DNA of 63,469 nucleotides, counting the filler, from Octopus bimaculoides (taxonomy: Eukaryota), in assembly GCF_001194135.2 (NCBI RefSeq). It is 6 parts of 5 records of this genome, joined end to end, with 100 filler letters (N's around TTAATTAATTAA, not from the genome) between each part and the next. Parts side by side here need not be neighbours in the genome. Positions count along the whole stretch, not along the records: positions 47,733 to 60,199 come from NC_068982.1; 5 more parts are not named here. One strand, 5' to 3'. Shown here piece after piece: positions 7,913 through 59,602 of this stretch. Below the pieces are notes generated by a model. That model saw only the letters and a list, made by a program, of their open reading frames with translations, ran no database searches and was not told the DNA's origin. A program made the translations under genes and the position numbers. How positions within the stretch are numbered: position 1 is the first letter of the stretch; each line of letters starts with the position of its first letter.

Positions 7913-7996
<84 letters not shown>
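7913..7996. repeat. (TG)42 microsatellite
   Basis: Pure dinucleotide run read directly. Confidence 0.97.
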
Positions 7997-9890: not shown

Positions 9891-10836
9891 TACTTTATGG
9901 AATATGCCATGCTTGAATAATAAAATTATGAATATAGAGGTAAACACAAATATTACCCAAAATGCATTTTCTTATAATTCACCTTCGTCTATTCACCACT
10001 ATTTCTCACAGAACTTTTAGCAGCCTCTCGTGGAATACTAAGGCTCCACGTAGTTCCGATTGGGGAACGTTGTCTTAAATTCTAACTACAGAAATACTAA
10101 TCTGAGTTACTAAGCCCATACTACAAGAAGACTAACCTATCACTCCTAACTCCAAATAACAGAAACACTAACCTTAACCTTACCAGAAACTCTTAACCTT
10201 AACTTAACCGCTAACCAATTATACCCGACCTGAACCTGATCATAGAATTAACACTGACGCTCAGTGAGAATCCGAAGAACCACTCCCTACAAATAACCCT
10301 AACTATGACTCTTACACTAACCCCAAACGTAAGTCGAAACCCTAATATGCTTACTCAGACAAGCTATTTAGTATTCTCATATGACATATTTTAATTCAAA
10401 CCTTGTAATATACAGTATCAAAATTAAGAGCCCGGATGTAAATGTATATAATCTTTTCGTTTCTGTAGTTTGTCAAATTGGTTTTCCACACATTTTTGCA
10501 GAGTCAGACGACAGTTTTTAATATAGTAATGCCACCAGATGGCAGCTATGTATAGAAAAGCTATAGGTTTCCGACATACATTTTAAACACATTGTGACAT
10601 CATTGACATCAGTGACCTTTGAAGAGGTCACCGTCACCTGACTTTTGCAGAGATGTCTGTGATTCTGCTTGTTTGCGTATATGTATATAAATGTGTTTGT
10701 GTGTGTACATATATACATATTTGTAACGTGTGCATGAATATGTATATGTGTTTGTGTGTGCATGTACCTATATATTTATACATCCATATATACATGTTAT
10801 GTGTGCACGTATATGTACATATGTGTATGTATGTAC

Positions 10837-10941
<105 letters not shown>

Positions 10942-10988
10942 TACATGCGCACACGTACATACATATACACATAAATACACACACGCAC

Positions 10989-11019
<31 letters not shown>

Positions 11020-11271
11020 TCTAATATTTCGTTTAAAAGTTAATAGCCCTTTGACATATTCTCTAGTATTTACTGTTGTAGAAAAAGAGGTTGGTTAATG
11101 AGCGACAAATTATCTATTGTGTATACGTCTTCTTCACATTGTTACTATCATCATTATCATTATCATTGTAGTCGTTGATCTTCTTGTTGTTGTCGTTGTG
11201 GTTGTTGTTCCTGTCATAGTGTTTCCAAATTTGTCCCACTTGTTGACTGTCATGACGACAAACAGTAATAT

Positions 11272-11428
11272 GATTTCTAGCTTTGGCCCAATGTCAGAAA
11301 TCCTGAAATGAGGTGCTTTAGTCAACCAGTTTCCCCACCCAAGTAAGTACTGGCCTGATTTTCATTTTATCAGCCTCGGATGAATAAAAGGCAAATTCGA
11401 CAGTGATGAGATTAGAAAACAGAACGAA
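11272..11428 (-). mobile_element. SINE family B, diverged
   Basis: aagtactgg...ttttatcagcctcggatgaataaaaggcaaattcgac...cagaacg is a decayed reverse complement of the family-B body. Confidence 0.45.
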
Positions 11429-11499
11429 AAGAAACGAAGGTACATAAACATTAACAACACACTCTGCTGACTATCTGCTATCTATTTGCACCGAAGAAA

Positions 11500-11670
11500 A
11501 GAAGAAAGAAAATGTAAAAAAAGTTTATTGAGCGAAAAGTCACCCGACGAGACACATCTACACCGAAGGATGGACCACAACCAGTTGTCAAGAATCTCAT
11601 CCGCGAAGGACCGATGCAAGATGAGTCGAAACGATCGTTGTGATTAATAAAGAATCTCGTGAACTCTATA
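11500..11670 (+). mobile_element. Penelope-type terminal repeat fragment with a hammerhead-like relic
   Basis: gaaggac...gtcgaaacgatcgttgtgattaataaag: GAAAC plus the palindrome AACGATCGTT plus AATAAA, the usual layout of PLE termini. Confidence 0.35.
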
Positions 11671-11831
11671 CACTCTTTCTCCCATTACGGTGGTATTTAT
11701 ATTATTGCTGCTGATGACATCCGGTAGCCGCAGACAGTGAACGTGCTTTGATCGGCATACTATCAGGTGTAAACTCAAGTCTAAAATATATAATTAAAAA
11801 AATGTATATGAAAATGAAAAATGAAAAATGA

Positions 11832-11992
11832 CATCGACCCCAGTAGTTAACTCGTATCTTATTTTTCCCCCGGAAGTATGAGAGACAAAGTTGACCTCGG
11901 CGAGATTTGAGCTCAGAACATAAAGAGCCGGAAGAAATACCGCTAAGCATTTATATCCGATGCACTAACGATTCTGCCAGCTCACCGCCTTA
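11832..11992 (-). mobile_element. SINE family B
   Basis: The minus strand taaggcggtgagctggcagaatcgttag...tgagctcaaatctcgccgaggtcaactttg...ggggtcgat matches the other family-B copies. Confidence 0.8.
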
Positions 11993-12899
11993 GGTTGCAC
12001 TATGTGTCATAAGTCTGTCAGTGGTGTCATTATTTTTGTTACAAATGCATCGGGTACCCAATCTTACAACGGTATCAATATTATTTTATATTAGTTTTAT
12101 TATTTTATATTAATTTTATTATTTTATGTTACAAATGTGTCACAGACTACACCTTTACCACTAGTAACATTTTTATGTTGCAATTGCATCATGAACTGTT
12201 CTTCATATCATTCTGTGTATGCGCGTGCGCGTGCGTGTTTACATTAAACTATATCAAGATGTCCACTGCTGATGAAGCTATAGATCTTGTTTACTTGAAT
12301 GGTTTTACGTTCATCTCCCCCATTGATATGTTTGACTTTTAGAACGAATCACATTCATACAATATAGCTGATACCGTTTGCAGATACCTATACAATATAG
12401 GTATTGGTTTGCAAGATACCTATACAATATAGCTGATACTTCCCCGTTTTAGAAAAGCTTACTGAATAACATTAACATCCTCATTAAAAAAATAGCCTTA
12501 AGAAACGTCCAGAAGATGACGCCACTGCTACTCATGCAAATAAATGTGTTCTTTTTTGTTTCGTTCACATCTCTTCGAGGTTCAGCCATTAAATTTACAT
12601 TGCTTAGTCTTCGAGCAATTTTTGCAGCAATGTCTTTATTAACGCACAGTCAATTGTTGTCACTTCCTGTTGTTTACCCTTCGATAATTCCTTGCAACAC
12701 TCTCTTCATTAGCGTATACTAGATGCTTTCGTACACATCGGGATTCTCGAAACGTTATCTCTTCGCCGTGCACAAAAAGATATTTGATATTATATACGAA
12801 TATACATTCCTTCCATTACAACTAAGGTTTGTTGATTGAAAATAATTTCTTTTGCACCAGAATAGGACGACAATGTACATGACAGGTGTCAAACATCCA

Positions 12900-13045
12900 C
12901 TCGAGCAAAATACCTAACAGTATTTCGGCCGTCTTTACGTTCTGAGTTCAAATTTTACCGAGATCAACTTTGCTTTTCATCCTTTCAGGGTCGATGTAAT
13001 TGACTTACCCCTTTCCCCCGAAATTGCTGGCCTTGTGCTATTATT
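12900..13045 (+). mobile_element. SINE family B
   Basis: gtctttacgttctgagttcaaatt...tttcatcctttcagggtcgatgtaattgacttacccc...ggccttgtgc. Confidence 0.75.
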
Positions 13046-13189
13046 TTGGCTTGACTCAGGTTCGGTCATATTACTGGTAGGAATTATGCGGATAGCGGGT
13101 TACTATCTCTAACCTTAGGTATCCACAAGTTTTCCGCAGTCTTTCAGGTGCTTAGAACCCTCCTGATATTCCCTGACGTCCCTAACAGA

Positions 13190-13239
<50 letters not shown>

Positions 13240-13240
<1 letters not shown>

Positions 13241-13350
13241 CCTTCGGAATGGATAAAATAAGTACCAGTTAAGCACTGGGGTCGATCTAATCAACTAGCC
13301 TCCTCACCCAAAATTTCAGACCTTGTGCCTACAGTAGAAAAGATTATTAA
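13240..13350 (+). mobile_element. SINE family B, 3' half next to (ATT)n
   Basis: ataagtaccagttaagcactggggtcgatctaatc...aaatttcagaccttgtgcctacagtagaaaagattatt. Confidence 0.75.
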
Positions 13351-13557
13351 TTCGTTATTTCAATACAGGCTGGAATGGTTTTTCTATTATTTTCTTATGG
13401 TATGCTCTCAGCAGATTTTTTTTTTCCTGTAGGACCATTATATGTGGAATGAGGGAAGAAAAACATTGTCAGACAACCATTGATATTGTCTCTGTTGTTA
13501 TTGTTGTAAGCCCCAGTTAAATCTTAATTAAGAAGAACTATTTTTTCATTCTTTTAT

Positions 13558-13730
13558 TCTTTTACTTGTTTCAGTCATTTGACTGCAGCAATGATGGAAC
13601 ACCGCCTTTAGTCGAACAAATCAACCCCAGGACTTATTCTTTGTAAGCCTCGTACTTATTTTATCGGTCTCTTTTGCCGAACCAGCATCGGTTGTCAAGC
13701 GATGGTGGAGAAGCAAACACAGACACACAA

Positions 13731-13792
<62 letters not shown>

Positions 13793-13952
13793 CTATACGG
13801 CGAGCTTCTTTCAGTTTCCATCCACCAAATCCACTCACAAGAATTTGGTTGGCCTGAGGCTATAGTAGAAGACACTTGCCCAAGGTGCTACGCAGTGGGA
13901 CTAAACGCGGAACCATGTGGTTGAGAAGCAAGCTTCTTACAACACAGCCACC
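13558..13952 (-). mobile_element. SINE family A, near full length, with internal (TA)n(TG)n
   Basis: tRNA-like head tggctgtgttgtaagaagcttgc...ggttccgcgtttagtcccactgcgtagcaccttgggcaagtgtcttctactatag and 3' end gtcaaatgactgaaacaagtaaaagaata. Confidence 0.88.
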
Positions 13953-13959
13953 GTGGCCA

Positions 13960-14400
13960 TCAATTCTTCTTTGAGTTATCTTGAACTACATTACAGTGTC
14001 TTTTCCTTAATAAGACGGTAAGGCAGTGATTTGAGGAAGATTCGAGTGCTGTTTCTTGGAGGTCAATCGACCGCGTAGAGAATCCTTTGGTGGAGGCTTT
14101 TGTTGTTTAGACTAAAGTCACATCTGAACATACCTACGATCAGAGACGTTCCATCATTGACCATCTCATCTTTTTTTAGCCCTAGCGGATCTAGGACTGC
14201 AATACCTATTGCCTCTTTCCTTTTGTAAAATAAACATTAAGTTGCAATTTGAAGAAAATGCCATAGGTGTCTCTCGTAGGCCGAGCGACCACGTAGAGGC
14301 TGTCTTGTTATTGTCGTTGTGTAGCCCTAAGTAAGCCATATTCGAGTATATCTATGATCATAAGCATCTCAGTCGTTGCTATCTCGCTTTCTTTTTTCCT
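13960..14400 (+). repeat. Unclassified dispersed repeat family E
   Basis: gaacatacctacgatcagagacgttccatcattgacc and tgctgtttcttggaggtcaatcgacc recur at about 18205-18245 (-), 19160-19200 and 19400-19440. Confidence 0.55.
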
Positions 14401-14418
14401 ATGGATCTTTTCCGTTTG

Positions 14419-15181
14419 GTTGCAGCAGCTGCCAATGTCAATTTTCTGTTCGAATTGATTTCATATTTTAAGTGTAATGATACACTTTTAATGACGTGAA
14501 AGTAATCTTCGCTATAAATCAATGAATAAAGAGTTATTAGTAATTAAAGTTTGAAAATTTTGATAATTTTAGCCAATCATAAGCCACAGACACATTCCTG
14601 CCTGTTTCGACACTAACAAGCGGAAATATGAGAACTGTTGACAGCAGTCTTGTTTACTCGTTTCTTTTTGTCATTGAGCATTGAGGTGGTTGCGAGGTGT
14701 ACTAAAAATAACAGCTAAATAAGATTTTTTTCGATAAATCTTTTAAATTAAAGTTTATTTGCCAACATCTCGCTTAGAGATTTAAGACTAACTGTTTTTC
14801 TCTTTTGAATTAACATAAACATTTATTTACACGAAAGAAAATTACCGGAGTACTTTCGTGCTAAAAATAACAGCTAAATAATATTTATTTACATGAAAGA
14901 AAATTACCGGAGATATAACACATGTTGTTTACAAATATTGACAACACGTGCTATTTTCAGTATGTTGACGACAAAATATGCAGTCACGCACAAATGACAG
15001 CTTCCAAATCTTGTTTCCTGACTGAGTGAAATCGATCAAACTTTAAACCTCTATAACTTTTTAAAAACATTTTTCTGGAAAAAATGAAATAACTCCAGCA
15101 ATTCAGTTTGGGCAAATCTATTATTGTGCCAAATTTTATAATTTTCGGTAAACTTTAATTTTTGGAGCTGCTGGCAACCAA
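14419..15181. mobile_element. Candidate MITE with about 18-bp imperfect TIRs and internal duplications
   Basis: ggttgcagcagctgccaa (14419) is an inverted match to ttggagctgctggcaacc (15162-15179). No ORF and no clear TSD. Confidence 0.4.
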
Positions 15182-53931: not shown

Positions 53932-54115
53932 CGCAGGAAGAAATGTTTAGCGGCATCGCCTCCGCCTTGACGTTCTGAGTTCAAATTCCGCCGAGGTCAG
54001 CTTCGCCTTTCATCCTTCCGGGGTCGATAAATTAAGTACCAGTGAAATACTGAGTCGATGTAATCGACTGGTCCCCTCCCGCCAAATTTCTGGCCGTGTG
54101 CCTTTAGTATAAAGG

Positions 54116-54190: not shown

Positions 54191-54256
54191 NNNNNNNNNN
54201 NNNNNNNNNNNNNNNNNNNNNNNNNNNNNNNNNNNNNNNNNNNNNNNNNNNNNNNT

Positions 54257-54590
54257 CCCACTGCATGGTACCTTGGGCAAGTGTCTTCTACTATAGTCTC
54301 GGGCCGACCAAAGCCTTGTGAGTGGATTTGGTAGACGGAAACTGAAAGAAGACCGTCGTATATATGTATATGTATATATATGTGTGTGTTTGTGTGTTTG
54401 TGTTTGTCCCCCTAACATCGCTTGACAACCGATGCTGGTGTGTTTACGTCCCCTTAACTTAGCGGTTCGGCAAAAAGAGTCCGATAGAATAAGTACTAGG
54501 CTTACAAAGAATAAGTCCTGGGGTTGATTTGCTCGACTAAAGGAGGTGCTCCAACATGGCCGCAGTCAAATGACTGAAACAAGTAAAAGA
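54257..54590 (+). mobile_element. SINE family A
   Basis: Near-perfect match to the other family-A copies. Confidence 0.9.
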
Positions 54591-54611: not shown

Positions 54612-55040
54612 TTGAAGCAGCCAGCCTACATAATCGTTAGTGCACCGGAGAAAATGCTTAGCTGCATTTCGCCCGTCTTTGCACTTTGAGTTCAAAGGTT
54701 GCCAAAATTGACTTTGCTTTTCATACTTTCGGGCTGAAACTAGGGTCGATGTAATGGAGTAGCCTACCTCAACACCAAATTTCAGGCCTTCTGCCTATAA
54801 TGGGAACGATTGATTATTATTAAGGCAGTCAGCTGGAGTAATCGTTAGCCCGCCGGACAAAATGTTCAGCGCCATTTCTTCTGGCTTTACGGTCTGAGTT
54901 CAAATGCGTCCAATGTCAACTTTGACGTTCATCCTTTTGGGGTCGATAAAATTAAGTACCAGTTAAATATTGGTGTCGATCTAATTGACTTGCCCTCTCC
55001 CGCTAAAACTGATAGCCCTATGCCAAAATTTGAAACCACT
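54612..55040 (+). mobile_element. Two tandem SINE family B copies (54612-54812 and 54820-55040)
   Basis: Each starts right after (att)n, with a head like taaggcagtcagctggagtaatcgttagc, and carries ggggtcgataaaattaagtaccag or a remnant of it. Confidence 0.8.
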
Positions 55041-55974: not shown

Positions 55975-56160
55975 AGCTGGCGTTAGAGCATAGGATAATA
56001 TACTGAGTGATATTTCTTCCGGCTCTCTATGTTCTAAGTTCAAATCTCGCCAAGGATAACTTTACCTTTTATATTTCCGGAGTCGATAAAACAAGTACCA
56101 ATCTAGCGCTGGGGTCGAATAGTATCGATTAATCTGCTTCTTCCTGAATTGTTGATCTTG
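55975..56160 (+). mobile_element. SINE family B, diverged
   Basis: gttctaagttcaaatctcgcc...ggagtcgataaaacaagtacc...ggggtcgaat. Confidence 0.65.
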
Positions 56161-57170: not shown

Positions 57171-57450
57171 AAGTATGTATATACGTATATGAGACAGTTG
57201 GTATATGAATGCACGTGGTTGGATGTATAAAAAACAAAATAGGATGAAAAAACTACAGATTTGTATTATATGGTTAAAAACTTTATTAAAATTGTCATGT
57301 TAGGGAAATTATATAAAATCTTGTGTATAGGGGGTTCCTATAAGGTTGTTATCCACCCCTGATTGGAACTCTCCCGTATGACATGTACGCATGCTCAGTG
57401 ACTTGCTTTAACTTCCGCAGACGACTCACATACTGTACTGACCGGTTAAT

Positions 57451-57637
57451 ATGTCTCCGAAGAAATCACGCGAATACTGCTGTATATGCAGCCACTATAG
57501 AAGGAAGAATGTAGACGGCAAAGTTATTTCACTACATAGATATCCTGCAAACGTAGCTATTCGTCGTATTTGGCTTCAGAGATCGAGACTTGTGAGGAAA
57601 GACTTTGTTTACACTGCAAGCTATGATATGTTTCTTT
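57451..57637 (+). CDS. THAP-type zinc-finger N-terminus (probable transposase), partial, runs into gap
   Basis: MSPKKSREYCCICSHY...VISLHRYPANVAIRRIW...VRKDF: C-x2-C, H-R-(F/Y)-P and R-x-x-W THAP signature. The C-x2-H end is not visible. Confidence 0.68.
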
Positions 57638-58143
57638 NNNNNNNNNNNNNNNNNNNNNNNNNNNNNNNNNNNNNNNNNNNNNNNNNNNNNNNNNNNNNNN
57701 NNNNNNNNNNNNNNNNNNNNNNNNNNNNNNNNNNNNNNNNNNNNNNNNNNNNNNNNNNNNNNNNNNNNNNNNNNNNNNNNNNNNNNNNNNNNNNNNNNNN
57801 NNNNNNNNNNNNNNNNNNNNNNNNNNNNNNNNNNNNNNNNNNNNNNNNNNNNNNNNNNNNNNNNNNNNNNNNNNNNNNNNNNNNNNNNNNNNNNNNNNNN
57901 NNNNNNNNNNNNNNNNNNNNNNNNNNNNNNNNNNNNNNNNNNNNNNNNNNNNNNNNNNNNNNNNNNNNNNNNNNNNNNNNNNNNNNNNNNNNNNNNNNNN
58001 NNNNNNNNNNNNNNNNNNNNNNNNNNNNNNNNNNNNNNNNNNNNNNNNNNNNNNNNNNNNNNNNNNNNNNNNNNNNNNNNNNNNNNNNNNNNNNNNNNNN
58101 NNNNNNNNNNNNNNNNNNNNNNNNNNNNNNNNNNNNNNNNNNN

Positions 58144-58391
58144 AGCAGATTGGGATCAGGCAATACTTCACCGAGAGGAGATATAAGCTTCTGCTTATTC
58201 CTGTCTGAAGTATCGTCCGATACTTCAGACTTATCGTCCGATGAATTTACTTTGTTGACATTCTTCATCGACAGAATTTTTATACCTTTCAACCTTTCAG
58301 TCAAGTCCGCCTTTCTTCCAGTAACATACTGTCCATATAATCTTAAATATTTCTTTAACTCAGGCACAGTAAGTACTTCGATAAGTACCAT
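58144..58391 (-). CDS. SAP-domain protein N-terminus (probable ISL2EU second ORF, SWIM/YqaJ type), partial
   Basis: LTVPELKKYLRLYGQYVTGRKADLTERL is a SAP consensus, followed by KQKLISPLGEVLPDPNL. About 82 codons with no stop before the gap. Confidence 0.7.
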
Positions 58392-59371
58392 GATAAGACG
58401 TAAAACAATAACAATAGCGTGGATAGTCTGCGGAAGTTTAATTGTCTACACGGAGCGCTGCCTAGCCAAGGGAGATAACCTACTTATAGGAAAGTCCTAT
58501 AGTGACATTGTTTTTGGAGAAATAATCGGTTTCGCATTTTCTTTTCAAATTTCTCAAATTTCTTTACCGATATTCTGTCATGTATTCGTTATGGTGTAAA
58601 CCACATTTGAACTATTTTCTGTGCAAACGAATAAACAACATTCCAGGAATCTCGACTTTTCACAATACCCCATCATCTAATCAATGGATTGCTGTGATGG
58701 TGATAATATTTTACCTTGAACCAATGCCAAGAGACAGAACTCTAAAACACCATGCAAAAGAAAAAAAAAAGCTTCCAATGAATTATAGAAATGCAGTGTA
58801 GGTAATTATTTTTATTAAATACAAAAACAAGAACAAGGATAGGCAAACGCGGAGAGGATACGGCAGTGTGTGAAGGGAGCGGGGCATTTTCCGACAGTAA
58901 TAATCTCAGGTGTCGAACTGGCAGATTCGTTCGCGAGTTCTAAGACTCGGCACTCCGAGTTTGTCTGTCACCCATGTCGACTTGGTTGTTCATCCCATCG
59001 GATTCGAAAAGAGAAAGAAGTTCCAATCCAAGGTAATGGATTGGTGGTACTGAAAGAACATTGAACGAATGCCTTGTACTATTTGTTTCAGTTCTTTCTG
59101 TCTGAATTCAAATCCCACCATGGCCAATTTGTGTGGTAGATTTAATCCGTTGCTAAATTTTATTTACATTATCACCTGGACTCCACTCTATTGCAAGCAT
59201 TAAGGCTCGATTTCCGGTTTGAGTATAACTTCCTTTTTCCATCCCATCACTTTTGGAGACTCTGTGAAGAGTTATGGGTACTGGCCCTTTTCTTGACACA
59301 AAGATAACAATTATGAAAGGTGTGACATTTGACATTTATTGGTGATATAGAATGTGATGTCAATCAGGACA

Positions 59372-59602
59372 GACCAAAGCCTTGTGAGTGAATTTAGTAG
59401 ACGGAAACTGAAAGAAGCCCGTCGTATATATCTATATATATGTATATATGTATATATGTATGTGTGTGTATATGTTTGTGTGTCTGTGTTTGTCCCCCCA
59501 ACATCGCTTGTCAACAGATGGTGGTGTGTTTACGTCCCCGTAACTTATCGGTTCGGCAAAAGAGTCCGATAGAATAAGTACTAGGCTTACAAAGAATAAG
59601 TC
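59372..59602 (+). mobile_element. SINE family A, internal part
   Basis: gaccaaagccttgtgagtg...gaaagaagcccgtcg(TA)n...ggttcggcaaaagagtccgatagaataagtactaggcttacaaagaataag. Confidence 0.85.

What the first reader, a model, noticed from the sequence alone, without database searches (positions are those of the whole stretch)
57329..58498. TIR-bounded two-gene element with convergent THAP and SAP ORFs, core hidden in a gap
Seen: 25-bp imperfect TIRs (agggggttcctataaggttgttatc vs the reverse complement of 58474-58498, 19/25), flanked by AT if the ends are AGG..CCT, or by TATA if GG..CC. A THAP-like ORF starts at 57451 (+) and a SAP-domain ORF at 58391 (-). Both are stop-free up to the gap. Known: ISL2EU (PHIS group) transposons encode a THAP+DDE transposase plus a second SWIM/YqaJ exonuclease-type protein; Kolobok elements also carry THAP transposases, with RR..YY ends and a 4-bp TSD. 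Inference: the KL..GE.LPDP motif favours ISL2EU with an added N-terminal SAP DNA-binding domain. Nearly all other gaps here abut microsatellites, but this one opens in unique-looking coding sequence, as expected for a young multicopy family the assembler collapsed. At 1170 bp as assembled it cannot hold both full genes, so either the gap is under-sized or this is a deletion derivative keeping both promoters and N-termini.
Basis: partly seen in the sequence, partly recalled or inferred. Interest (0 to 1): 0.75.

Follow-up and report, generated by a model that had tools for sequence, protein, structure and literature searches.

The report
Defective ISL2EU transposon copy in octopus
This is one copy of a multi-copy "cut-and-paste" jumping gene of the known ISL2EU type in the Octopus bimaculoides genome, with its middle hidden in an assembly gap and signs of decay. 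It is ordinary as a genome feature, though its relatives show some tidy, little-described details of this transposon family.

Summary
The 25-nt inverted ends match 19/25 and each is flanked by AT. A THAP ORF starts at 57451 (+) and a SAP ORF at 58391 (-), and both are open up to the gap.

The ISL2EU reading is supported by relatives. The SAP peptide belongs to a mollusc family of 565-600 aa proteins with SAP, SWIM and YqaJ exonuclease domains. In Sinanodonta, Mya and Haliotis that gene lies tail-to-tail with a THAP + HTH_Tnp_4 + DDE_Tnp_4 transposase gene.

The Sinanodonta element is 4,566 bp and the Mya element 6,484 bp. Their ends align with the octopus ends, and AT flanks every end but one, a Mya copy that reads TG at one end. 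This settles the ends as AGG..CCT with an AT duplication and rules out Kolobok.

SAP is shared by the mollusc clade, not added in this element. Fish, tick and sponge relatives carry a C-terminal PHD finger instead.

About 3.9 kb of the Sinanodonta element lies between the points where the octopus contigs stop, against 506 estimated N. Other octopus copies are proven internal-deletion derivatives. This copy has lost the ancestral SAP start and a zinc-binding Cys of THAP, so it is defective and probably short.

It is a new member of a known kind, of low interest.

The parts
57327..57328 (.). Left target-site duplication, AT (inside TATA)
   Evidence: Read directly. AT is invariant next to the first element base in all six termini aligned, from octopus, Sinanodonta and Mya. 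It flanks 6 Mya copies at the left end and 5 of 6 at the right.
57329..57372 (+). Left (THAP-side) terminal inverted repeat. The 25-nt core 57329-57353 extends by homology to about 57372.
   Evidence: 19/25 match with the right end. It aligns with the Sinanodonta THAP-side end AGGGCATTCCAATAAGGTTGTTGTCTCCCCTTATTAGGAACTCT.
57387..57395 (+). TACGCATGC, a palindromic motif conserved on the THAP side (Sinanodonta TGCGCATGCG, Mya GGGCATGCGC). It resembles an NRF1-type site; that reading is inference.
57410..57422 (+). Subterminal motif AACTTCCGCAGAC, 29-41 bp upstream of the THAP ATG. It is either an ETS-like promoter element or a transposase-binding site (inference).
   Evidence: An identical copy lies inverted at 58426-58438. 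ACTTCCG is invariant in all six aligned termini and is also present at both Haliotis ends.
57451..57637 (+). 5' stub of the transposase gene: the N-terminal half of the THAP zinc finger, 62 codons, cut by the gap. The third zinc ligand (Cys of CxxH) reads Phe.
   Evidence: Pfam THAP E=0.004. 80-83% identical to octopus THAP paralogs. 67% identical to the start of the Sinanodonta THAP-HTH-DDE gene. TASYDMFL here against TANSQMCS in paralogs and in Sinanodonta.
57638..58143 (.). Assembly gap, 506 N (estimated size). In a full-length element this interval would hold about 3.9 kb or more.
   Evidence: The homologous points in Sinanodonta L001 are about 10246 and 14161.
58144..58391 (-). 5' stub of ORF2 (SAP-SWIM-YqaJ exonuclease gene): the SAP domain and the linker up to the KLISPLGEVLPDPNL motif, 82 codons. 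The first three codons (MVL) replace the ancestral MDIKQLDDSA.
   Evidence: Pfam SAP E=8e-6. 97-99% identical to octopus paralogs. Homologous to Sinanodonta P0016.
58203..58242 (.). Perfect 13+13 palindrome and an 11-bp direct repeat inside the ORF2 linker. This is a deletion hot spot in paralogs.
   Evidence: I4. P0004 lacks 7 aa here and P0008 is deleted or frameshifted here.
58426..58438 (-). Subterminal motif AACTTCCGCAGAC on the SAP side, mirror of 57410-57422
58455..58498 (-). Right (SAP-side) terminal inverted repeat. The 25-nt core is 58474-58498. The extension is homologous to the Sinanodonta SAP-side end (CCCTTAGATAGGTGGCGCT).
58499..58500 (.). Right target-site duplication, AT

Best explanation
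Positions 57329-58498 are one copy of a multi-copy ISL2EU DNA transposon (PHIS / Harbinger-like superfamily) of Octopus bimaculoides, inserted at an AT dinucleotide inside TATA.

The autonomous form, seen intact in bivalves, has two genes that point inward from the two ends. One encodes a THAP + HTH + DDE transposase that cuts and pastes the element. The other encodes a SAP-SWIM-YqaJ protein, a lambda-exonuclease-type nuclease with DNA-binding modules. I infer that it helps process or repair the DNA ends during transposition; this is not shown.

Each end carries a roughly 25-45-nt inverted repeat plus a conserved ACTTCCG motif 15-40 bp ahead of the start codon. These presumably serve as transposase-binding sites and as a compact promoter.

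The window copy keeps both ends and the first 62 and 82 codons of the two genes. It cannot be autonomous as read. Its ORF2 start region is replaced and a zinc-binding cysteine of THAP is lost.

My best estimate, at about 0.6, is that it is an internal-deletion derivative of roughly 1.2 kb that could move only with transposase supplied by another copy.

Shown: family membership by homology, ends, AT flanks, multi-copy status, and the existence of deletion derivatives in the same genome. Inferred: the role of ORF2, the promoter function of the motifs, and the true size of this copy.
For: Species and copy number: 14 UniRef O. bimaculoides proteins match the two stubs at 72-100% identity, and some clusters hold 3-9 members.

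ORF2 family: an exhaustive HMMER search gives mollusc proteins of 565-600 aa with SAP, SWIM and YqaJ/Viral_alk_exo domains. The window motif KLISPLGEVLPDPNL is shared with them.

Two-gene architecture: the SAP-YqaJ gene is convergent with a THAP + HTH_Tnp_4 + DDE_Tnp_4 gene in Sinanodonta, in 6 Mya loci, in Haliotis by tblastx, and in a fish relative. The window THAP stub is 67% identical to the start of the Sinanodonta transposase.

Ends:
- The Mya copies are 6,484 bp, more than 99.9% identical, and flanked by AT.
- The Sinanodonta element is 4,566 bp with ends AT|AGGGCATTCCAATAAG.
- The octopus ends align with these, with side-specific homology: left = THAP side, right = SAP side. Nucleotide identity is 74-76%.

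Literature: ISL2EU is defined by an AT duplication, a THAP/HTH/DDE transposase and a YqaJ ORF2. It is already known in the oyster, and non-autonomous families of 746-1483 bp are known.

Deletion derivatives in octopus: the tail of P0015 after the SWIM codons CNC is the reverse strand of window 57342-57419 (85% identity, E=4e-14). Six more models stop right after CNC.

Decay of this copy.

Gap size: it is an estimate, not a placeholder.
Against: The interior is unread, so no DDE or YqaJ coding sequence is seen in this copy or in any octopus sequence I could reach. Every octopus protein model found is 133 aa or shorter, apart from one 278-aa chimeric model (P0020) that keeps only the SAP start and part of the pre-SWIM segment.

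The 506-bp estimate could be wrong. Both contig ends lie inside a repeat, so read pairs from other, shorter copies could have set it.

The cluster of differences in the last 18 bp before the gap (5 of 6 codons) could be a contig-end assembly error rather than real decay.

A 2-bp AT duplication seen at a single copy has no statistical weight on its own. It rests on the relatives.
Confidence: 0.88

Rival explanations
1. This copy is a full-length, two-gene ISL2EU element of about 4.5-6.5 kb. The gap is simply under-sized because the assembler could not resolve a young repeat.
For: Both gene stubs run open into the gap with authentic coding sequence. On the SAP side the sequence continues past the point where the P0001-type models diverge. 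Contigs break about 300 bp inside the repeat on both sides, which is typical of a collapsed repeat. The SAP stub is 97-99% identical to paralogs, so the family is fairly young.
Against: The gap estimate is 506 bp against at least 3.9 kb needed. The ORF2 start and a THAP zinc ligand are damaged in this copy. No octopus protein with DDE or YqaJ from this family turned up in either large search. Deletion derivatives are demonstrably common in this genome.
Confidence: 0.35
2. It is a Kolobok transposon, which also has a THAP transposase, with a 4-bp TATA duplication and GG..CC ends.
For: THAP domain at the N-terminus; TATA on both sides.
Against: The closest transposase, 67% identical over the stub, carries HTH_Tnp_4 + DDE_Tnp_4, the Harbinger/ISL2EU type. 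In Mya the flanks share only AT, not 4 bp, and the base outside AT varies. The partner gene is YqaJ, the ISL2EU hallmark.
Confidence: 0.01
3. Scaffolding mis-join: the left and right contigs belong to two different copies or fragments of the family, not to one element.
For: Both contig ends lie in multi-copy sequence, so linking read pairs may be ambiguous.
Against: The two arms are the two different ends of the family (THAP side and SAP side). They stand in the correct inward orientation, each is bounded by AT, and each continues into unique-looking flank. The chance that a random join gives this exact geometry is low.
Confidence: 0.05
4. It is a pair of host genes, a domesticated THAP gene and a SAP gene, not a transposon.
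For: UniProt lists the paralogs as 'THAP-type / SAP domain-containing protein'.
Against: There are dozens of near-identical, truncated and frameshifted paralogs. The element has inverted ends with AT flanks that are homologous to those of mobile copies in Mya that are more than 99.9% identical to each other.
Confidence: 0.01

Closest known systems
ISL2EU transposons of Repbase / PHIS superfamily, e.g. ISL2EU-10/11/15_CGi of Crassostrea gigas (PMC4482050, Table S2)
   Same: AT target-site duplication. Transposase with THAP + HTH_Tnp_4 + DDE_Tnp_4. A second gene with a YqaJ exonuclease domain. Size of 4-6.5 kb in relatives. An animal host, with molluscs already known as hosts. Non-autonomous short derivatives exist.
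   Different: The published consensus has TIRs starting with GG and a target A|AT|T. Here the ends start AGG (octopus, Sinanodonta) or TGT (Mya), and the site is T|AT|A. The papers I could read describe ORF2 only as 'YqaJ'; here it is SAP-SWIM-YqaJ. I found no paper naming ISL2EU in a cephalopod. I could not compare directly with Repbase sequences.
The unnamed elements found here in Sinanodonta woodiana (L001 9900-14465) and Mya arenaria (L004 9915-16396)
   Same: Homologous termini, with 74-76% nucleotide identity to Sinanodonta. The same side-specific subterminal motifs, the same start of the transposase (MSPKKSREYCCIC / MSLPKTRKYCCIC), and the same ORF2 family and motifs.
   Different: Those are complete two-gene elements. 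The Mya copies are more than 99.9% identical and so probably active. The octopus copy shows only the two 5' stubs and is damaged.
PIF/Harbinger
   Same: Related DDE_Tnp_4 transposase and a two-gene layout.
   Different: Harbinger makes a 3-bp TWA duplication and its second gene is Myb/SANT-like, not YqaJ.
Kolobok
   Same: THAP domain on the transposase.
   Different: Kolobok has a different transposase catalytic domain and a 4-bp TTAA duplication (own knowledge). Neither is met here.

Membership tests
ISL2EU (PHIS superfamily) | 2-bp AT target-site duplication | tested here: met
   AT on both sides of the window copy. AT is invariant in the six aligned termini of three species and flanks 6 Mya copies at the left end and 5 of 6 at the right. 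No empty site was available to prove duplication in octopus.
ISL2EU (PHIS superfamily) | Transposase with DDE_Tnp_4-type catalytic domain plus HTH and N-terminal THAP | tested here: inconclusive
   The window copy shows only the first half of THAP; the rest is in the gap. The homologous gene in Sinanodonta, Mya and the fish has THAP + HTH_Tnp_4 + DDE_Tnp_4, and the window stub is 67% identical to its start. The feature is met for the family and unread for this copy.
ISL2EU (PHIS superfamily) | Second gene encoding a YqaJ exonuclease-domain protein | tested here: inconclusive
   The window copy shows only SAP and the linker. Octopus paralogs reach the SWIM region. Full-length relatives have YqaJ at E=1e-12 to 1e-19. 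The feature is met for the family and unread for this copy.
ISL2EU (PHIS superfamily) | Terminal inverted repeats of 6-259 bp, usually starting with GG | tested here: met
   A TIR is present, with a 25-nt core matching 19/25. The first base is A followed by GG (AGG..CCT), a small departure from the usual GG; Mya starts TGT.
ISL2EU (PHIS superfamily) | Multi-copy, mobile | tested here: met
   At least 16 distinct octopus protein models derive from paralogs. Mya copies at 6 or more loci are more than 99.9% identical.
Kolobok | 4-bp TTAA duplication and a Kolobok-type transposase core | tested here: not met
   The flanks are TATA, of which only AT is conserved in relatives. The related transposases are DDE_Tnp_4.
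PIF/Harbinger | 3-bp TWA duplication; Myb/SANT second gene | tested here: not met
   The duplication is AT. The second gene is SAP-SWIM-YqaJ.

The most novel reading that the evidence does not exclude
The mollusc ISL2EU lineage has two features that the ISL2EU papers I could read do not describe.

- Its second protein is modular: SAP-SWIM-YqaJ in molluscs, against SWIM-YqaJ-PHD in fish, ticks and a sponge.
- Both 90-120-bp termini have stayed 74-76% identical between an octopus and a freshwater mussel, which is more conserved than the coding sequence. They contain an ACTTCCG (ETS-like) motif in front of both genes and a GCGCATGC (NRF1-like) motif in front of the transposase.

If these motifs are a built-in housekeeping-type promoter pair that doubles as transposase-binding sites, the element would couple expression of its two convergent genes to the same DNA that defines its ends.
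Probability: 0.3. Interest if true: 0.4.

Novelty: new member of a known kind. Interest (0 to 1): 0.25.

Why it matters
For the octopus genome this matters mainly for annotation. Dozens of 'SAP domain-containing' and 'THAP-type domain-containing' proteins in UniProt for O. bimaculoides are stubs of this transposon and its deletion derivatives, not host genes.

For transposon biology, the near-identical 6.5-kb copies in Mya arenaria look like a currently active ISL2EU element with both genes intact. That would be a good starting point for testing what the YqaJ-type second protein does, which remains unknown for this group.

Tried and rejected
- Fetching DNA of octopus paralogs: the look-up of encoding contigs has no record of P0001 or P0003. 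The octopus proteins are UniRef-only, so no second octopus copy could be read as DNA. TSD and TIR comparison within octopus was therefore impossible and was done with bivalve relatives instead.
- Testing whether the tail of P0001/2/4 (LKIFVSCRISQIMT) is the reverse strand of the THAP stub, which would mark a roughly 580-bp derivative: only a 4-aa match (CRIS, E=1.8). Not usable.
- A small inversion to explain the missing MDIKQLDDSA start: it cannot be tested without paralog DNA, so I dropped it.
- Recent horizontal transfer between octopus and mussel: coding identity is only 64-68% nt and 67% aa, so there is no support for it.
- A literature search combining ISL2EU with mollusc terms returned only unrelated papers. 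ISL2EU plus octopus returned none.
- Other copies of the ends elsewhere in the piece: none found.
Full report
**What is in the sequence**

The piece comes from Octopus bimaculoides. Both peptides hit UniRef proteins of that species at 72-100% identity.

- 57329-57353 against the reverse complement of 58474-58498 match at 19 of 25 positions. The repeat finder gives 28 nt at 79% when the flanking TATA is included.
Its 13-nt core AACTTCCGCAGAC is identical at 57410-57422 (+) and 58426-58438 (-).
- AT stands directly outside both ends, at 57327-57328 and 58499-58500.

Both ORFs are open up to the gap. The THAP ORF (57451, +) has 62 codons and the SAP ORF (58391, -) has 82. Pfam gives SAP at E=8e-6, above its cut-off. 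It gives THAP at E=0.004, below the cut-off because only model positions 1-40 of 87 are present.

**The gap**

What can be said without reads is this.
- The long ORFs that the ORF listing carries across the N run are artefacts.
- The two real ORFs are on opposite strands and converge, so there is no frame to be continuous.
- The gap length is an estimate, not a placeholder. The only other gap in the piece is 66 N and abuts (ATT)n.
- By homology the two flanks are the two different ends of one transposon family, in the correct mutual orientation (see below). This argues against a random mis-join but does not prove continuity.

**What the two stubs belong to**

The octopus paralogs of the SAP peptide are, with one exception, short models of 63-133 aa. 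Several of them continue into KAKQQLRSGIFYHDRHVHSIEYHD...VHSADCNC. The exception is P0020, a 278-aa chimeric model with a Kazal domain that keeps only the SAP start and part of that segment.

An exhaustive HMMER search with one of the short models (P0003) found 108 relatives. The complete ones are 565-600 aa, and the best is Sinanodonta woodiana P0016 at 54% identity. Pfam finds SAP at the N-terminus, a SWIM zinc finger, and a YqaJ / viral alkaline exonuclease domain in them.

Examples are KLVTPLGEKMPLP, KFLSPLGELLPDP and KLITPLGETIPDP.

A k-mer search with P0016 shows the family across bivalves and gastropods, with no cephalopod full-length member among the 120 best.

**Genomic context in relatives**

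- In Sinanodonta the SAP-YqaJ gene (L001 10001-12110, +) is followed by a convergent gene (12353-14346, -) with THAP, HTH_Tnp_4 and DDE_Tnp_4.
- Six Mya arenaria loci show the same pair.
- In Haliotis the transposase is unannotated but present downstream on the opposite strand (tblastx).
- The window's THAP stub is 67% identical to the first 60 residues of the Sinanodonta transposase: MSPKKSREYCCICSHYRRKNVDGKVISLHRYPA against MSLPKTRKYCCICSNFRGKEVDEKTISLHRFPA. The octopus THAP paralogs that are complete reach 72-75%.

So the two stubs in the window are the 5' ends of the two genes of one element type.

**Ends and target site**

The Mya copies share 6,484 bp at more than 99.9% identity. They end AT|TGTCCTTTCCGATAAC...GTTATCGGAAAGGACA|AT. 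The Sinanodonta element is 4,566 bp (9900-14465) with ends AT|AGGGCATTCCAATAAG...CTTATTGGAATGCCCT|AT.

The octopus ends align with these. In the six-terminus alignment the invariant positions are AT, a single G, TTCC, ATAA, TT, and ACTTCCG.

The homology is side-specific. The octopus left end matches the THAP side of Sinanodonta (...CCCCTGATTGGAACTCT.., 73.7% over 114 nt). The right end matches the SAP side (...CCCTTGGCTAGGCAGCGCT.., 75.6% over 82 nt).

The ends are AGG..CCT with a 2-bp AT duplication, not GG..CC with TATA.

**Comparison with what is known**

PMC4482050 defines ISL2EU by three features:
- an AT duplication;
- a transposase with DDE, HTH and THAP;
- a second ORF with a YqaJ exonuclease domain.

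Its mean length is about 4.8 kb and its hosts are animals only. Table S2 of that paper already lists four families in the oyster Crassostrea gigas, and non-autonomous families of 746-1483 bp in other animals. PMC4122938 and PMC9179366 say the same.

All defining features are met by the family. For the window copy itself the DDE and YqaJ parts are unread.

Kolobok is excluded, because the related transposases are DDE_Tnp_4 and only AT is conserved outside the ends.

Two small departures from the published consensus remain. The first base of the TIR is A or T rather than G. The site is T|AT|A rather than A|AT|T.

**Is SAP an addition?**

Not for this element. SAP is present in the mollusc relatives generally. 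More distant relatives from fish, ticks and a sponge have SWIM-YqaJ with a C-terminal PHD finger and no SAP. The fish one is likewise paired with a THAP-HTH-DDE_Tnp_4 gene.

The second protein of ISL2EU therefore carries different DNA- or chromatin-binding modules in different lineages. The papers I could read mention only YqaJ.

**State of this copy**

Between the points where the two octopus contigs stop, Sinanodonta has about 3.9 kb (L001 about 10247-14160). The gap is estimated at 506 bp.

Three observations bear on the choice between a short derivative and an under-sized gap.

1. Internal-deletion derivatives of this family certainly exist in the same genome. The tail of P0015 after the SWIM codons CNC (SSKSLSMRTCHTGEFQSGVDNTL) is the reverse strand of window 57342-57419 at 85% identity, E=4e-14. 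In that copy ORF2 is fused directly to the left subterminal region, and the whole transposase gene and the YqaJ part are gone. Six further models (P0003, 5, 7, 9, 10, 11) end exactly after CNC, where the window's reverse strand reads TAA. The window copy is not of that type, because it keeps the ACTTCCG block and 62 THAP codons.

2. This copy is damaged at both stubs.
   - The ancestral ORF2 start MDIKQLDDSA is present in all 11 paralogs and is homologous to MSYLNDDA of Sinanodonta. Here it is replaced by unrelated sequence, and the ATG at 58391 is fortuitous.
   - The last six THAP codons before the gap read SYDMFL where paralogs and Sinanodonta read NSQMCS. This removes the Cys of the C-x2-H zinc ligands.
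   - The THAP changes are in-frame substitutions packed into 18 bp at a contig end, so an assembly error there cannot be excluded.

3. No octopus protein containing DDE or YqaJ of this family appeared in either large search. This evidence is weak, because annotators mask repeats.

I put about 0.6 on a roughly 1.2-kb deletion derivative, 0.35 on a longer copy hidden by an under-sized gap, and 0.05 on a mis-join.

**How it works**

The first part follows from established knowledge of Harbinger/ISL2EU elements. The DDE transposase binds the ends, with THAP and HTH as its DNA-binding parts. It excises the element and inserts it at AT with a 2-bp staggered cut.

The role of the second protein is not known. 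From its domains I infer a 5'-3' exonuclease of the lambda-exo/YqaJ type, since the ExK motif LEIKCP is conserved in the relatives. It would be tethered to DNA by SAP and SWIM and would process the ends or the donor break.

The ACTTCCG motif lies 15-40 bp upstream of both start codons in all four species, on the sense strand of each gene. On the THAP side there is also a GCGCATGC-like palindrome. From my own knowledge these resemble ETS and NRF1 sites of housekeeping promoters. They could equally be subterminal transposase-binding sites. This point is inference only.

A copy like the one in the window could move only if another copy supplies both proteins.

**Verdict**

The element is a new member (octopus) of a known kind and probably a defective copy. 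Interest is low. The useful by-products are the annotation point (many octopus 'SAP' and 'THAP' proteins are transposon stubs), the SAP/PHD modularity of ORF2, and an apparently active element in Mya arenaria.

Noticed in passing
window 58203-58242: There is a perfect 13+13-nt palindrome (GTCTGAAGTATCG tc CGATACTTCAGAC), plus an 11-bp direct repeat TATCGTCCGAT 21 bp apart, inside the ORF2 linker. Paralog P0004 lacks exactly 7 residues here and P0008 is deleted or frameshifted here, so this looks like a slippage hot spot.
   Followed up: partly
window 47733-47808, 53977-54052, 54896-54971, 56036-56111: There are four copies of a tRNA-like SINE core (GAGTTCAAATTCCGCCG...GGGGTCGATAAA..AAGTACCAGT), often next to (ATT)n (D5-D7).
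   Followed up: no
window 48739-49078 (-), 54256-54590 (+), 59367-59602 (+): A roughly 340-bp repeat carrying a TG/TA-rich microsatellite occurs in three copies at 83-92% identity (I1-I5, D8-D10). It is another interspersed repeat family.
   Followed up: no
L003 9913-22559 (Mya arenaria CP111013.1): Two complete copies of the 6.5-kb element lie head to tail and share a single AT between them. All Mya copies are more than 99.9% identical, so the family is probably active now.
   Followed up: partly
L006 16395-16397 (Mya arenaria CP111012.1): One Mya copy ends ...GGACA|TG instead of |AT at its right flank. It is the only exception to the AT flank among the copies read.
   Followed up: no
L008 10936-13286 (Haliotis cracherodii): A THAP-DDE transposase gene is not annotated in the record but is detected by tblastx downstream of the SAP-YqaJ gene. 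The terminal repeats of this copy were not found; only the ACTTCCGCCGAGTA inverted pair at 7977 / 13352 was.
   Followed up: partly
P0183, P0184, P0188, P0193, P0197, P0208 (sponge, fish, tick and metagenome relatives): Distant relatives of ORF2 carry a C-terminal PHD finger and no SAP. In the fish locus L010 the gene overlaps a THAP-HTH_Tnp_4-DDE_Tnp_4 gene on the other strand.
   Followed up: partly
P0020 (O. bimaculoides, 278 aa): This gene model fuses the SAP start and part of the pre-SWIM segment of this transposon (it diverges before the SWIM finger) to a Kazal-domain and acidic-tail sequence. It is either a chimeric prediction or a host gene that captured the transposon's 5' exon.
   Followed up: no
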